A stretch of DNA of 63,127 bases, filler included, from Octopus bimaculoides (taxonomy: Eukaryota), in the NCBI RefSeq assembly GCF_001194135.2. It is 5 parts of 5 records of this genome, joined end to end, with 100 filler letters (N's around TTAATTAATTAA, not from the genome) between each part and the next. Parts side by side here need not be neighbours in the genome. Positions count along the whole stretch, not along the records: positions 24,926 to 38,316 come from NC_068988.1; 4 more parts are not named here. One strand, 5' to 3'. The translations under genes and the position numbers were made by a program. Shown here one piece after another: positions 25,034 to 36,219 of the stretch. Every line of letters starts with the position of its first letter. The stretch's first letter is position 1. The notes below the pieces were generated by a model, which had not been told where the DNA came from, searched no databases, and saw nothing but the letters and a program-made list of their open reading frames with translations.

Positions 25034-25102
25034 CTTCGGGACGATTTCCTGCTTTACATCCTGGAATTCCATGAAATGAATACTTTCCGTAATGCTGTGA
25101 AC
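25034..25102 (-). CDS. GRL locus A, putative exon 2 (loop after TM6)
   Basis: Acceptor tttctatttcatatgaAG, donor GTaaag; 69 nt, phase 0/0, VHSITESIHFMEFQDVKQEIVPK. Continues GVRLNKS in frame, as expected for short phase-0 C-terminal exons of the GR family. Confidence 0.62.
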
Positions 25103-25119
25103 CTTCATATGAAATAGAA

Positions 25120-25215
<96 letters not shown>

Positions 25216-25374
25216 AAGAAGAACAACAACAACAACAACAACAACAATGACAATAATAATGATGATAATTTTAAAAAAAGCAGCATGGAACGAGAAAAAT
25301 GTACGGTCAGTTTGTAAGGGATGTGAACGCCAAGACAAATACAGAGGACCGGTGGTCACCTAAAAATAGAGATA

Positions 25375-25536
25375 GGCACAGGAGTGGCTCTGTGGTAAGT
25401 AGCTTGCTTACCAACCACATGGTTCCGGGTTCAGTCTCACTGCGTGGCACTTTGGACAAGTGTCTTCTACTATAGCCTGGCCGACCAAAGCCTTGTAAGT
25501 GGATTTGGTAGACGGAAACTGAAAGAAGCCCGTCGT
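25375..25536 (+). mobile_element. tRNA-derived SINE family 1, 5' part
   Basis: ggcacaggagtggc..tggtaagtagcttgcttaccaaccacatggttccgggttcagt head. Confidence 0.8.
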
Positions 25537-25699
25537 TGGAATTTAACCAGTTCAGCGTCCCACGACATCACTGGTCGGCATGGACTTATCTCTGCGAATT
25601 CCGATCTGCAGTCTCACTGACTTTTCTTGGTTATCATCGGAGAGGCAAGGCACATCATTAGCAGTATTTATTTCGATTGTTTTCATCTGCTTTTACTCT

Positions 25700-26300
25700 C
25701 ATCTGATAAAATAATTTACCAGTCCCTTCCCTAGAATCAGCTACATTTTGTCGTGTAGAGTGTCTTTGGGAATCTCCTTCAGCATTCCAATTAGTTAGAA
25801 ATGGCGAAGTACTGATTGAGAAGATATCAATTTCCTCCAACAGAAATCATTTGTATGTTAACGGACACTATAAAGGATTGGTTAAAACCGACGTTGATTC
25901 GAAGAATAAATCCGATACTGAGAAAGGTTAAAAATTGTTACGACTCTATTCAATATAGCAAATAAAATGCAGAATATACTTGTGATTGATCCTTGAATGA
26001 CATGTACCACAAAACGATAGTAATCTCCGAACGAATTGCCTTTGTATAGCGTCAAACATCAGAATTAAAACCATGTACTGTAATGGCTTTTCGTTCAGAA
26101 TCCCACAGATTGTCAATATCTTTTCTGAAATACATGAATCACCAAAGTAGTGTGGATGTAGATGTTATGATAAAGTGAACGGACGGTGCACTATTTAGAA
26201 TTTCAGACTATATAAACTTGTGGTATCAACTTCGTATTTCCTCATCCGCAAAACGGAGGATCAGTGACAGCTTAGTGATACCAATGTCTATGTCATAACA
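25700..26300 (-). mobile_element. Highly decayed LINE RT fragment (RTE-like) in GRL-A intron 1
   Basis: Broken motifs VIQGSITSIFCILF (QG..LSP.LF-like) and EEIDIF...NAEGDSQR. Many stops. Confidence 0.3.
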
Positions 26301-26387
26301 CGGCCACAACACACGGTCTGGGGCAACGAAAGCATAAAAGATGTAATTAAGTTTGGATTATTTTGAAATAACGTAAAACAAACTCAC

Positions 26388-32266: not shown

Positions 32267-32893
32267 AGGTGCATGCTTGAACGGAGGTTTCTTTTTCACA
32301 GTTTTGAGAAGTTCCCGGCGGCGAATATTCTTTCGCTGTCTTCTAGATCACTTAATTTGATCAGAATCTGCCGACTGGTTAACTTCACTGGACTCCGGAT
32401 TTTCTGCAGACATATTGGAGCTTCTTTTTGTATCGATATTGTCCTCGGAATCAGATGTTGTAATAGGCATATTGTCTGGTGCTTCTCTCAACAATAACTG
32501 TCACCTCAGATACACAAACTTGTCTTGAAGGAATTTACTCCAATAATTTATACCTGATATTATTATTATTATTATTATTATTATTGTTATTATCATCATC
32601 TTTTAAAAAGGATTGACGTAACTCTTCACAAAGGCAAACAGTCAAGACGAAGAGCGGAATTCGATTGTAAGATATTTTATTCGTTGAACTCTATTTCAAC
32701 AGTAAGTCTGTCTTTGTCAAGTTCAAAATAAGAAGTGATAAAAATTCGAAATTATAGAAATTTAAACGTAAAGTATGAACGAAAGCAACCAGCGTCCATA
32801 CGTTGATGGAATGACATCGTCAGTTTTTAAGTTACAATTTTATAACAGGCGAAAAGAAAAAAAACAGAAAAAAATAGAAAAAAAGAAGACGAC

Positions 32894-32927
<34 letters not shown>

Positions 32928-33469
32928 ACACGCCGACTTGGCAAATAATCGTCACCACACCGGAAAAATTGCGTAACAACATTTTTTCCGGCTTTTTACA
33001 TTGTCACGCCAAATGCCATGAATGGCGGTTTTCGCTTCCAATCTATCGGGATCAATAAACTGAATTCGACTTTTCTATCCCCTCAAATTTTCTGGCTTTG
33101 AGTAAAATTCAGAACAGCAACATTTTCGTCAAAAGAACTAGTTTGGTAATTCAATTATACTTTGGTATTTGTCAATACATAAGTGGAGAGGTCAATGCTA
33201 AGTGTACACATACTGTTAAGAAGGAATACCAGGAAAATCAATCTTTTCTAATCGATGTATATAAGTCCAAGCAGGTGGATCCTAATCCACCAAGTGAAAG
33301 TATGTCAGAAGAAAGTAATTCAACAACGCGGGTTGATGAACCGTAAGACGTGTGGCCAGAACCTCCTGGAAAATAACCATAGCGAGGGACATCCCACAGT
33401 TGAATTAAAACAGTCACAAACAGTGAAAGAAGACATGCACCCAACACTAGAGCTGAAGACACCTCTGAA

Positions 33470-33600
33470 AGGGGGTGGCCCCGCCACGTCAAAACGGTAG
33501 AGGAGTAGGGGCCGAAACCGGACGTGGTTCCTCTTGATGATGTCTTGAGCTAACTGGATCCTATAAAGGAGCTGTTGTGGGAGCAGACCACAAAACATGG
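33470..33600 (+). repeat. Unclassified repeat shared with 60095-60235
   Basis: cgccacgtcaaaacggtagaggagtaggggccgaaaccgga...ctggatcctataaaggagctgt occurs in both places. Confidence 0.7.
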
Positions 33601-34021
33601 TTGAAATTCCTCCTTTATAAAGAAGTTGAACATTTTACAAAATAGAAAGATCTGAAATAGAGATAATCAGAATTTGGAACCTGGAGCAGAAACAATCTTT
33701 ATAACAACACGTACTTCGGAAATGATAACAAAACATGCAGAAACGTGGGTAGCTAGGAAGCAATCATATACAAAATACAATAAAATGCAGTGAACAGAAG
33801 TACTCGGTACCGTTCATATATAACATAGCATACATTCAAAATAGTGAAATTAACAAAACGAAAACAGAGCACTACACATTTTAATGTGAGACCGAACCTG
33901 ATCTATGAGGCTGGAATGTGAGGCAATAAACTGACCTGAAATCCAAGAGCATTCTAAAGTCTCTGCAGAATTGCCAAATAAATATGTAACTATAGAATGA
34001 GTATGATAAGCATATTTTCTA

Positions 34022-35265
34022 TCAGGTCATCCCAGAAGTTCTGTCCGATTTTACCTTTTTTAAAATTGAATGAAATTTAATAGTTTTTAGAATGTCTAAT
34101 GGAATTAAAACATATTTTTATGCATTTGTGTACATTCAAACTAAATAAATATTATTTTACAGAATAATAGAATTAAAATTTCTTTGATTAAAACTCTTTC
34201 TAACATGGAAGTATCCAAAGACCATTTGAGGCACATAATGCTTTATGAGTACAAAAAAGGAATCTCTGCAGCCGAAGTGACTCGAAACATACACTCAGTT
34301 TATGGGAAAGAATGCTTGAATGAAAGAACTTGCAGAAGATAGCTTGCAAAATTCAGAAGTGGAGATTTCAGCTTTGAAGATGAAGATCGAACAGGATGCC
34401 AGTTGAGTTAGATGATAAGCTCCTTGAGGCATTACTTGAAGAAAATCCTGCATTATCAGTTGAAGAATTGGCAATAAAGCTTGGTTCAAACCGTACAACT
34501 ATTCATCGTCATCTTCAACAACTTGGAAAGGTTCCTAAACTTGGAAAATGAGTGCCTCATGAATTGTCCGAAAGCAACCGCACAACCCGAGTTGACATCT
34601 GCTCTTCTCTCCATTCTCGCGAATTCATTTCACCCCTTTTGGATAAACTTGTGACTGGTGACGAAAAATGGATCTTCTATCGAAATGTTAAACGTCGTAT
34701 ACAATTGCTTGGTAAAAAGGGAAAAGCTCAACCACAACCGAGAAGAGAACTTCATGGATAAATGGTTCTTCTCTCTATCTGGTGGGATTGCAAAAGAGTA
34801 ATTCACTTTGAATTGTTATCACCTAATGCAACAATCAATGCTCAAGTCTACCGTCAGCAATTAGAGCGTTTGAACCAAACTTTGAAGAAAAATAGACCCG
34901 CTTTAATCAATCGAAAAGGAGTGATGTTTCATCAGGATAATGCGCGACCCCACACTGCAAAGATCACATCACAGAAGATCGAAGAGCTGGGTTGGCAAAA
35001 AATTCCTCATCCACCTTATTTTCTTGACCTTGCTCCTTCAGGCTACCATTTGTTTCGGAGGAGGTTGAAGCTGACATTTCAGAGTTCTTCGCTTTGAAAC
35101 CAAAAGAGTTTTCACATTAATGGGATAAAAAAGCTTGTAAATAGATGGAAGGAAGTCATAGATAATCAGGGAAAGTACATTGATGATTAAATTTCAATCA
35201 AATATAACATTTGATCACTTGTTTTCTTTATTCAAAATTCGGACAGAACTCATGGGATGACCTGA
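34022..35265 (+). mobile_element. Full-length decayed mariner (Tc1/mariner, D,D34D) transposon
   Basis: About 28-bp TIRs (tcaggtcatcccagaagttctgtccga / tcggacagaactcatgggatgacctga), TA at 34020-21 and 35266-67, 1244 bp. Transposase 34205-35190 has VPHEL, TGDEKW, HQDNARPH and DLAPSGYHLF (third D mutated to G), plus internal stops. Confidence 0.95.
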
Positions 35266-35275
35266 TAAAACTTAC

Positions 35276-36219
35276 CGATTTGTTTAAGCGAACTCCGACC
35301 AAAAGCATCAAAACCCAAAAGAGCAAGTGTCCAGCCGCTATCAATGAAATGTAACCGTATTCATACGGGTTACTTGAGTAGGTGTCGTTTATGATTCCGT
35401 AAGTTGCAATACAACTGCTGGTGAAGCCACCAAGTATGATAAATCCCGAAGAAAGATTCAGTGATTCATTTAGTAATCTCAGTATTGTACTCAGAGTATC
35501 ATGCGTTTTAATGATTTCACTAATCTCTCTTTGACTTTTGAAAACAAACGTAATGTCGGATCGCTTTTCATTTATATAACGTTGAGCCTGATTCGCCACT
35601 TTGGTAAACTGATAAATAAGTGTAGATGCAGTTATAAGTTCATATATATATCAACTATCACGTGCAGAAATGAAATGCAATTAAATACAGCATCTATAAT
35701 CAAATACAGTATAATATTAATATCATTGTTTGGAAGAGGATATGTGTAGAGACGCAGAGCATCTTCACTGAAAAAAGTAATAAGGAAATCCAAACTTAAG
35801 ACGTAAACTACATTGGTGAGTACAAATATAGATAAGGACATATATGAATATAGAGTCATAAAATCTTTTATCTTCTTCTTCAATGTTAAGTTCAGCAAAT
35901 GTTCTCATTAGTTCTGTGTTTCCAGAATTTCTTAAGAATTTAAAACAACAATCCATGGCAATGAAACACCTAAAAGTAATTATGTGTAAATATGTAAATA
36001 CACGACCGGTGCTTAAATTTTCCAATTCCATCAAACAAATACCAAGGCGAATAGGGTTTGTAATTAAATATGCAGAGAGTATTATATGAAACACTTGCAA
36101 ACAAGTTTTTTTTTAATGTCACGTATTTTCAGTGAGAATATATTTATATGTGCTTTCGTAAAATTATATTTTTGATAAAATTCTAAGATTTTAAAGAACT
36201 GTGTTCCTCTTACATTCAT
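35276..36219 (-). pseudogene. GRL locus B, exon 1 (TM1-TM6), three frameshifts
   Basis: Paralogue of locus A: shared TQFFKxLEFYQKY, NPIRL, VANxAxRY, HDxLS, NESLxLxSGF, TYGIIN, GVRLNKS then donor GTaagt. 944 nt. Shifts at the T9 run 36106-36114, at 35851-35881 and at about 35635. Confidence 0.75.

What the first reader, a model, noticed from the sequence alone, without database searches (positions are those of the whole stretch)
25034..36219. Tandem pair of gustatory-receptor-like (7TM ion channel) loci in an octopus-type genome
Seen: two paralogous minus-strand ~312-314-codon exons with six hydrophobic segments and shared motifs (TQFFKxLEFYQKY, NPIRL, VANxAxRY, HDxLS, NESLxLxSGF, TYGIIN, GVRLNKS), each ending at the same phase-0 GT donor. 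Established: insect GR/OR and invertebrate GRL genes often have one long TM1-6 exon, an H..L...N motif before TM5 and short phase-0 3' exons. Inference: this is a local cephalopod GRL expansion, separate from the nAChR-derived chemotactile receptors known in octopus suckers. It could be an overlooked chemosensory receptor family, easily missed because the ORFs are split.
Basis: partly seen in the sequence, partly recalled or inferred. Interest (0 to 1): 0.85.

Follow-up and report, generated by a model that had tools for sequence, protein, structure and literature searches.

The report
Octopus gustatory-receptor-like gene, two broken exons
The two "loci" are alternative first exons of one octopus gustatory-receptor-like (insect-taste-receptor-type) ion-channel gene, built like the fly gene Gr39a. 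Both exons carry frameshifts in this assembly, so the family call is right but this stretch probably encodes no working receptor.

Summary
The paralogous minus-strand exons are real: A at 27324-26388 and B at 36219-35276. Both show all the listed motifs and end at phase-0 GT donors. Neither is an open reading frame. A has one frameshift. B has three.

The GR-like call holds.
- The closest named relatives are Octopus bimaculoides and O. sinensis "uncharacterized" proteins, three of which carry a Pfam 7tm_7 hit.
- AlphaFold models of two full-length relatives match only insect OR/Orco/GR structures in the PDB.
- Predicted topology is N-terminus inside, TM7 reads TYILVVIQ, and the 3' introns are phase 0.

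The main correction is architectural. In O. sinensis, six such long exons precede a single set of three short exons that encode TM7, and RefSeq isoforms join different long exons to that shared 3' end. The window holds one copy of the first short exon (25102-25034), downstream of both A and B. The TM7 exon lies beyond the piece edge. So A and B are most likely alternative 5' exons of one gene, as in Drosophila Gr39a/Gr28b.

B is a decayed pseudo-exon. A is either recently inactivated or hit by a 1-nt assembly error.

This is a new member of a known kind, of moderate interest.

The parts
35276..36219 (-). Long exon B: own ATG at 36219, encodes TM1-TM6. Pseudo-exon with three frameshifts: A9 run 36114-36106 (+2 nt), about 35853 (-2 nt), about 35635 (-1 nt).
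   Evidence: Three-frame translation. Segment mapping. tblastn to Octopus GRLs. The orthologous contig L003 is also frameshifted, at a different site. dN/dS 0.69 against L003.
35270..35275 (-). Phase-0 splice donor GTAAGT of exon B.
   Evidence: Sequence. The same position is used as a donor in all family members, whose read-through ORFs all continue '..NKS VS..'.
26388..27324 (-). Long exon A: own ATG at 27324, encodes TM1-TM6. One 1-nt insertion at about 26950-26965, otherwise open.
   Evidence: Alignment to the intact O. sinensis orthologous exon (L004 42321-43271) shows one non-3n indel plus in-frame 3-nt and 18-nt indels. tblastn E=1e-106. dN/dS 0.42.
26382..26387 (-). Phase-0 splice donor GTGAGT of exon A.
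   Evidence: Sequence.
25034..25102 (-). First shared short 3' exon, VHSITESIHFMEFQ|DVKQEIVPK. Upstream acceptor AG at 25104-25103. Internal acceptor CAG| gives a 9-codon form 25060..25034. Phase 0 at both ends.
   Evidence: tblastn E=2e-10 to the C-termini of the Octopus isoforms. Sequence. Syntenic with L004 46673-46741 at 78% nt. RefSeq isoforms with and without the 14 residues (P0013 against P0039, P0036 against P0002).
25028..25033 (-). Donor GTAAAG of the short exon. The next two exons (ILVFLNRL... and the TM7 exon ...SFITYILVVIQTK..) lie beyond the piece edge at 24926.
   Evidence: Sequence. O. sinensis exon map. No match to those exons anywhere in the piece.

Best explanation
The window holds the 3' part of one octopod gustatory-receptor-like (GRL, 7TM ion-channel superfamily) gene, organised like Drosophila Gr39a/Gr28b. 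It is a tandem array of large alternative 5' exons. Each has its own start codon, encodes TM1-TM6 (the variable, ligand-facing part) and has a phase-0 GT donor. Any one of them is spliced to a single shared block of short phase-0 exons that supply the TM6-TM7 loop and the TM7 helix.

Exons B and A are the last two large exons seen in the piece, and 25102-25034 is the first shared short exon. The TM7 exons lie off the piece.

By analogy with solved insect GRs and ORs, intact isoforms would assemble as tetrameric ligand-gated cation channels. In those structures TM7 lines the pore, so isoforms of this gene would share TM7 and differ in their binding pockets. This step is inferred, not shown.

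In this genome B is a dead pseudo-exon with three frameshifts and relaxed constraint. A carries a single 1-nt insertion, so it is either a recently inactivated pseudo-exon or the victim of a base-call error. The gene itself may still work through large exons upstream of the piece.
For: Family:
- The best named hits are O. bimaculoides LOC106880719 and O. sinensis LOC118764607/8. Pfam PF08395 (7tm_7) is recorded on P0002, P0013 and P0039.
- AF2 models of P0002 (pLDDT 76.5, pTM 0.73) and P0038 (77.5, 0.73) give top-19 and top-15 Foldseek PDB hits that are exclusively AgamOR28, AaegOR10, Orco, ApOR5, MhOR5, BmGr9, DmGr43a and DmGr64a. These have probability 0.98-1.0, TM-score 0.39-0.59 and near-full-length alignments. 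The next hits have TM-score below 0.3.
- K+R counts are 23 on the predicted inside loops against 5 outside, for an N-in, C-out topology.
- TM7 reads SFITYILVVIQT.

Architecture:
- O. sinensis locus L004 has six long exons followed by one set of three short phase-0 exons.
- RefSeq isoforms X1, X2 and X3 of LOC118764608 map to three different long exons and share the same C-terminus. LOC118764607 X2/X3/X4 and O. bimaculoides X2/X3 show the same pattern by protein sequence alone.
- Window exon A is orthologous to the last long exon of L004, and the window's short exon to its first short exon.
- There is only one short-exon copy in the piece, 3' of both A and B.
- The Gr39a architecture, including frameshifted pseudo-exons in some species, is described in PMC2204066.

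Decay:
- Frame analysis.
- dN/dS is 0.69 for B and 0.34-0.42 for A.
- B's ortholog L003 and an A-like exon L002 are also broken, at other sites.
Against: - No transcript data for the source species, so use of A or B as exons is inferred from RefSeq models in other species.
- The TM7 exons are not in the piece.
- A second copy of the short exons could in principle hide in the gap at 30420-30576, whose length is unknown.
- Sequence profiles of the family find no solved insect GR or OR. Foldseek E-values are only 8e-4 to 1e-1. TM7 is modelled at low confidence (pLDDT 32-50).
- The Pfam hit is absent from P0003 and P0038, so it is marginal.
- Channel function, ligand and tissue are untested.
- A's single frameshift cannot be told apart from an assembly error without reads.
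Confidence: 0.72

Rival explanations
1. Exon A is intact in the animal. The 1-nt insertion at about 26950-26965 is an assembly or consensus error, and A is a functional alternative 5' exon of the GRL gene. B remains a pseudo-exon.
For: There is only one lesion in 937 nt, and the other indels relative to O. sinensis are in-frame. dN/dS of 0.33-0.42 indicates past purifying selection. The O. sinensis ortholog is an open frame. The insertion lies in a TGCTGCAGCAGCA repeat-like stretch.
Against: The gap and piece edges sit in (TA)n arrays, which looks like a short-read scaffold where indel errors are uncommon (inference). Related A-like and B-like exons in other octopod data are also broken, so exon death is frequent in this family.
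Confidence: 0.3
2. One reading: A and B are two separate tandem GRL genes, each with its own TM7 exons.
For: Each has its own ATG and donor. They are 8 kb apart, with an unsized gap between them.
Against: No TM7-type or short-exon match lies between B and A, and only one lies 3' of A. In O. sinensis six long exons share one 3' block, and RefSeq isoforms join different long exons to it.
Confidence: 0.07
3. The family is not a GR-type channel. It is another multi-pass membrane protein (a GPCR or transporter) that only resembles 7TMICs in a model.
For: There is no sequence-profile match to solved GRs or ORs. Foldseek E-values are modest. TM7 is poorly modelled.
Against: Two independent models give only OR/GR/Orco hits at the top. 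No GPCR appears among the 50 best hits listed for either model, and the ABC-transporter hits have TM-score below 0.3. Further support comes from the Pfam 7tm_7 hits, the N-in topology, the TYhhhhhQ motif and the phase-0 intron before the TM7 exon (criteria from PMC9998090).
Confidence: 0.05

Closest known systems
Drosophila Gr39a (also Gr28b, Gr23a): alternatively spliced gustatory receptor loci
   Same: Several large tandem exons each encode six TM domains, with their own start codon and 5' donor. Three small shared exons follow and encode TM7 and the C-terminus. Individual large exons are lost to frameshifts in some species (PMC2204066). The O. sinensis locus shows the same layout, and the window shows its 3' part.
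   Different: The sequences are unrelated at the level HMMER can detect. The octopus array is longer (six or more large exons over about 40 kb) with kilobase spacers full of repeats. The first short exon has two alternative acceptors. Whether the layout is ancestral or convergent is unknown.
Gustatory receptor-like (GRL) proteins of non-arthropod animals (Mollusca such as Aplysia, Annelida, Cnidaria; Robertson 2015 as cited in PMC7746228 and PMC5850775)
   Same: Seven TM segments with an N-in topology, the 7tm_7 / 7TMIC fold, a TM7 TYhhhhhQ-type motif, and C-terminal phase-0 introns.
   Different: This family is small and apparently restricted to octopods: 20 hits in 1.84 billion representatives. 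The F of TYhhhhhQF is replaced by T. No expression or function data exist. No paper in the searchable library describes cephalopod members.
Octopus RefSeq models LOC106880719 (O. bimaculoides) and LOC118764607 / LOC118764608 (O. sinensis)
   Same: Same family and same exon structure. Window exon A is the ortholog of the last large exon of LOC118764608 (57-60% aa, 73-75% nt).
   Different: The window comes from a more distant octopod: dS is about 0.6 against O. sinensis, whereas the O. bimaculoides and O. sinensis proteins are 88% identical. Both window exons are frameshifted. B has no clear ortholog in the O. sinensis stretch examined.
Cephalopod chemotactile receptors (CRs, nAChR-derived pentameric channels)
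   Same: Both are candidate ionotropic chemoreceptor families in octopus.
   Different: The fold is unrelated. No Cys-loop receptor appears among the 50 best fold-search hits listed for either model. CRs have known ligands and sucker expression (PMC11526382). For these GRLs nothing is known.

Membership tests
GR/GRL family (7TMIC superfamily, Pfam 7tm_7 PF08395) | Match to the 7tm_7 profile | tested here: met
   A precomputed Pfam PF08395 hit is recorded on relatives P0002, P0013 and P0039. It is absent on P0003 and P0038, so it is marginal. The window's own products lack TM7 and were not scanned.
GR/GRL family (7TMIC superfamily, Pfam 7tm_7 PF08395) | 7TMIC fold: seven helices with long TM4-TM6 extending into the cytoplasm | tested here: met
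   AF2 models of P0002 and P0038 show helices of 55, 48 and 30 residues at TM4-6. The top 19 and top 15 Foldseek PDB hits are all insect OR/Orco/GR, with TM-score 0.39-0.59. The TM7 region has low pLDDT.
GR/GRL family (7TMIC superfamily, Pfam 7tm_7 PF08395) | Intracellular N-terminus, the topology opposite to GPCRs | tested here: met
   Positive-inside count on P0002: 23 K+R on N-terminus/TM2-3/TM4-5/TM6-7 loops against 5 on the other side. This is a prediction only.
GR/GRL family (7TMIC superfamily, Pfam 7tm_7 PF08395) | TM7 motif TYhhhhhQF | tested here: inconclusive
   Relatives have SFITYILVVIQT, that is TY-h5-Q with T in place of F. Variant motifs are accepted in the family (PMC9998090). 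The window's own TM7 exon lies beyond 24926 and cannot be read.
GR/GRL family (7TMIC superfamily, Pfam 7tm_7 PF08395) | [quoted passage not shown] | tested here: met
   O. sinensis L004 has three phase-0 introns, the last directly before MIGSFITYILVVIQTKPL*. In the window, the donors after NKS (26388, 35276) and both ends of the exon 25102-25034 are phase 0.
GR/GRL family (7TMIC superfamily, Pfam 7tm_7 PF08395) | Detectable sequence homology to experimentally characterised GRs/ORs | tested here: not met
   hmmsearch with family profiles of 6 and 23 sequences against all PDB sequences found no OR or GR at E<=10. Low sequence similarity of this kind is usual among 7TMIC proteins (my own knowledge), and it is not by itself disqualifying.
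GR/GRL family (7TMIC superfamily, Pfam 7tm_7 PF08395) | Tetrameric ligand-gated cation channel activity | not testable with these tools
   Needs expression and electrophysiology or cryo-EM.
Gr39a/Gr28b-type alternatively spliced receptor locus | Several large tandem exons, each with its own ATG, six TM segments and a 5' donor | tested here: met
   Window exons A and B. Six large exons in O. sinensis L004.
Gr39a/Gr28b-type alternatively spliced receptor locus | One shared block of small exons encoding TM7, 3' of all the large exons | tested here: met
   There is a single set in L004 (46673-46741, 47640-47741, 49521-49586). In the window there is a single copy of the first small exon, 3' of A and B. 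The rest is off the piece, and the gap at 30420-30576 cannot be excluded as hiding another copy.
Gr39a/Gr28b-type alternatively spliced receptor locus | Transcripts joining different large exons to the same small exons | tested here: inconclusive
   RefSeq isoforms X1, X2 and X3 of LOC118764608 use three different large exons with the same C-terminus. LOC118764607 and LOC106880719 show the same pattern. These are annotation models. No reads were examined, and none for the window's species.
Rhodopsin-like GPCR or Cys-loop chemotactile receptor | GPCR 7TM fold or pentameric Cys-loop fold | tested here: not met
   No GPCR or Cys-loop receptor appears among the 50 best Foldseek hits listed for either model. 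Topology is predicted N-in.

The most novel reading that the evidence does not exclude
Octopods carry a small, lineage-restricted GRL gene cluster. In O. sinensis it is at least two adjacent arrays (LOC118764608, plus a further long exon starting about 9.8 kb downstream). By Gr39a-style alternative 5'-exon choice it could yield about a dozen channel isoforms that share one TM7 helix but have different ligand pockets. This would be a second, so far unstudied, ionotropic chemosensory (or thermo-/other sensory) system beside the nAChR-derived chemotactile receptors. The shared exon architecture with arthropod Grs would be either ancestral to protostomes or a notable convergence.
Probability: 0.3. 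Interest if true: 0.65.

Novelty: new member of a known kind. Interest (0 to 1): 0.4.

Why it matters
GRLs are known in molluscs, but I found no paper in the searchable library that describes them in cephalopods. There, sensory biology has centred on nAChR-derived chemotactile receptors and on GPCRs.

The octopus GRL genes are arrays of alternative TM1-6 exons sharing one TM7 block. This gives a concrete, testable candidate receptor family: intact isoforms exist in O. sinensis and O. bimaculoides. It also gives a clear case for asking whether the Gr39a/Gr28b-type architecture is ancient.

For genome annotation there are two lessons. Such loci should be modelled as one gene with many first exons. 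Single large exons decay often, as the two in this window have.

Tried and rejected
- tblastn of full-length Octopus proteins against the piece did not find the 3' exons, and a TY-x5-Q motif scan gave only chance hits such as TFIAAVLQSF* at about 28495 next to a microsatellite. The short exon appeared only when the X3-type C-termini were used as queries.
- Sequence-profile searches of the PDB with two family alignments gave nothing relevant.
- A word-index search with the 71-residue C-terminus returned only one protein.
- Exact look-ups of P0002, P0003 and P0017 in the contig index failed, because only the longest isoform of a gene is indexed. P0038 worked.
- I considered a frameshift shared by A and B and inherited from a common pseudogene ancestor, because both shift +1 in the same loop. 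I rejected it: orthologs place A's shift after GRKC and B's after RFYDS, which are different sites.
- I considered a micro-intron at A's frameshift and rejected it, because the only GT..AG pair there would give a 16-nt intron.
- Attempts to name the species behind the SRA runs SRR11869384-91 failed.
- Rfam and tRNA scans of the piece were empty.
- Six literature searches for cephalopod GRLs found none. Two further searches using the term 7TMIC returned nothing usable. Robertson 2015 is not held.

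
Full report
**What is in the sequence.** On the minus strand there are two paralogous stretches, A (27324..26388) and B (36219..35276). They are 63% identical in DNA and 41% in corrected protein.
- Both end at the same codon with a consensus donor: AAATCG|GTGAGT for A and AAATCG|GTAAGT for B.
- Neither is an open frame. Their lengths, 937 and 944 nt, are not multiples of three.
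- A reads in one frame to ...LEDKGRKC and continues in the +1 frame from ...NIIYSF. Alignment to the intact O. sinensis ortholog shows a single extra base at about 26950-26965. The other indels, of 3 and 18 nt, are in-frame.
- B needs three frame changes: +2 nt in the A9 run 36114-36106, about -2 nt at about 35853, and -1 nt at about 35635.

**The assembly gap.** The gap at 30420..30576 sits inside a (TA)n microsatellite in the non-coding 8 kb between A and B. Both piece edges are also (TA)n. It interrupts no exon.

**Relatives.**
- A frame-corrected A finds three proteins in 5.8 billion clusters: an unnamed ORF from an SRA assembly (55% identity), O. bimaculoides LOC106880719 X2 (44%, Pfam PF08395 7tm_7) and O. 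sinensis LOC118764607 X2 (41%).
- An exhaustive HMMER search of 1.84 billion representatives with a small family profile finds only 20 proteins at E<=1e-3.
- Every protein with a source name, among those looked up, is from Octopus. The unnamed ones I traced come from SRA runs numbered consecutively, SRR11869384-91.
- The family is therefore small and, as far as public data show, confined to octopods.

**Is it a GR-like 7TM ion channel?** The evidence for:
- Pfam 7tm_7 is recorded on three relatives, P0002, P0013 and P0039.
- AlphaFold2 models of two full-length relatives, P0002 and P0038, reach pLDDT 76.5 and 77.5 and pTM 0.73.
- In Foldseek against the PDB, the top 19 and top 15 hits are exclusively insect odorant and gustatory receptors: AgamOR28, AaegOR10, Orco, ApOR5, MhOR5, BmGr9, DmGr43a and DmGr64a. 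They have probability 0.98-1.0, TM-score 0.39-0.59 and near-full-length alignments. Below them the scores fall to TM-score under 0.3, mostly ABC transporters.
- The models show the long TM4-TM6 helices typical of this fold.
- The positive-inside rule gives 23 K+R on the N-terminus/TM2-3/TM4-5/TM6-7 side against 5 on the other, so the N-terminus is inside.
- TM7 of the relatives reads SFITYILVVIQT, which is TYhhhhhQ with T for the usual F.
- The O. sinensis gene has three phase-0 introns at the 3' end, the last immediately before the TM7 exon. These are the criteria used for Grs and Grls in PMC9998090.

The evidence against:
- Family profiles find no solved OR or GR by sequence.
- Foldseek E-values are modest, 8e-4 to 0.1.
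- TM7 is modelled poorly.

I accept family membership at about 0.9.

**Architecture, the main correction.**
- The RefSeq isoforms X2, X3 and X4 of LOC118764607 have different TM1-6 sequences but an identical C-terminus. So do X1, X2 and X3 of LOC118764608 and X2, X3 of O. bimaculoides LOC106880719.
- The O. sinensis genomic locus (L004, CM016866.1:82738771-82798359) shows why. Six long exons lie in tandem, starting at 1451, 6106 (a fragment), 10001, 16398, 27561 and 42321. Each ends ..LN(K/R/T)S|GTNAGT.
- They are followed by one set of three short exons: 46673-46741 (VHSITQSIHYMQFQ|GVDQEVVAK), 47640-47741 (ILVFLNRL...STLT) and 49521-49586 (MIGSFITYILVVIQTKPL*).
- A further long exon, presumably the start of the neighbouring gene's array, begins about 9.8 kb downstream.
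- With the X3-type C-termini as queries, the window yields one copy of the first short exon, 25102..25034 (VHSITESIHFMEFQ|DVKQEIVPK, E=2e-10). It has an acceptor AG at 25104-25103, an internal CAG| acceptor before 25060, and a donor GTAAAG at 25033. The internal acceptor explains the isoforms that lack the first 14 residues.
- That exon lies 1.3 kb 3' of A. No copy lies between B and A.
- Window A plus this exon are syntenic with the last long exon and the first short exon of L004.
- The remaining two exons must lie beyond the piece edge at 24926.

This is the layout of Drosophila Gr39a: large exons that each encode six TM domains with their own ATG and donor, spliced mutually exclusively to three small exons encoding TM7, with pseudo-exons in some species (PMC2204066). 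A and B are therefore best read as two alternative 5' exons of one gene, not two genes.

**State of the two exons.**
- B: dN/dS against its ortholog L003 is 0.69. Identity in the exon (75-87%) is no higher than in the 1.2 kb upstream (57-84%). L003 is itself frameshifted at another site. A degenerate mariner element (34022-35265) sits 8 nt 3' of B's donor and is absent from L003. B is a decayed pseudo-exon.
- A: dN/dS is 0.42 against the intact O. sinensis ortholog and 0.34 against L001, and there is only one lesion. It is either a recent loss or a base error. An A-like exon in other octopod data (L002) carries a nonsense codon, so exon death is common in this family.

**Mechanism (inferred).** An intact isoform would be a subunit of a tetrameric ligand-gated cation channel, as in solved insect GRs and ORs. 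The exon-specific TM1-6 would form the ligand pocket and the anchor helices. In the solved insect receptors TM7 lines the pore, so the shared TM7 exon would give all isoforms of the gene the same pore helix. Each large exon has its own ATG. By analogy with Gr39a, promoter or first-exon choice would select the receptor variant. In this genome, transcripts starting at A would stop after 133 codons, and those starting at B within about 43 codons, so they would yield no receptor.

**Novelty.**
- GRLs in molluscs are established (PMC7746228; PMC5850775).
- RefSeq already models the octopus genes as uncharacterized proteins.
- No paper in the searchable library describes cephalopod GRLs or their Gr39a-like structure. 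Robertson 2015 could not be read.

I rate it a new member of a known kind, with interest 0.4. The family call and the exon-array architecture are worth a note. The particular window, however, shows two damaged exons and lacks TM7.

**Source organism (inference).** A is only 60% identical in protein and 75% in DNA (dS about 0.6) to its O. sinensis ortholog, whereas the O. bimaculoides and O. sinensis proteins are 88% identical. The window therefore comes from an octopod more distant than those two are from each other. The species cannot be named with these tools.

Noticed in passing
window 34022-35265 (TIRs 34017-34052 and 35235-35270): A degenerate full-length mariner element of about 1.24 kb with 36-nt inverted terminal repeats and TA flanks. 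The transposase is Mos1/SETMAR-like (E=2e-29) but is broken by a frameshift and a stop. It is inserted 8 nt 3' of exon B's splice donor and is absent from the orthologous contig L003.
   Followed up: yes
window 25386-25536 and 38136-38288: An interspersed repeat of about 150-180 nt. The two copies are 77% identical, and five or more copies at 76-88% lie in the O. sinensis locus L004. It looks SINE- or MITE-like, with no tRNA or Rfam match.
   Followed up: partly
window 28757-29375: An imperfect palindrome of about 630 nt (76% self-complementary) in the spacer between exons B and A, flanked by (AC)n, (AT)n and (TG)n arrays. It may be a foldback element.
   Followed up: no
window 24926-24968, 30410-30590, 38288-38316, 25120-25247: The piece edges and the assembly gap all fall in (TA)n arrays. 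A compound (AAT)23(AAG)13(AAC)9 microsatellite forms the pyrimidine-rich tract, on the coding strand, just 5' of the short exon's acceptor.
   Followed up: partly
L004 (O. sinensis CM016866.1:82738771-82798359), 1451-2416 and 42321-43274: Two apparently intact long exons are not used by any of the LOC118764608 isoforms retrieved here. One lies 7.6 kb upstream of that gene's annotated start. The last one before the shared exons is the ortholog of window exon A. The RefSeq models may be under-counting isoforms.
   Followed up: partly
L005, L006 (SRA contigs SRR11869390, SRR11869384); proteins P0018, P0020, P0021, P0040: A second, much more divergent subfamily of long exons (15-27% identity to P0002/P0038, same ..N..|VS donor position). 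The two members I traced (P0018, P0040) come from the same octopod sequencing project as the core-family contigs. The family therefore has at least two deep branches.
   Followed up: partly
L002 (SRR11869391) and L003 (SRR11869385): Independent lesions in related exons of another octopod: an in-frame stop in an A-like exon (..FPISTNILKY*) and a frameshift near codon 267 of the B ortholog. This indicates frequent birth and death of large exons.
   Followed up: yes
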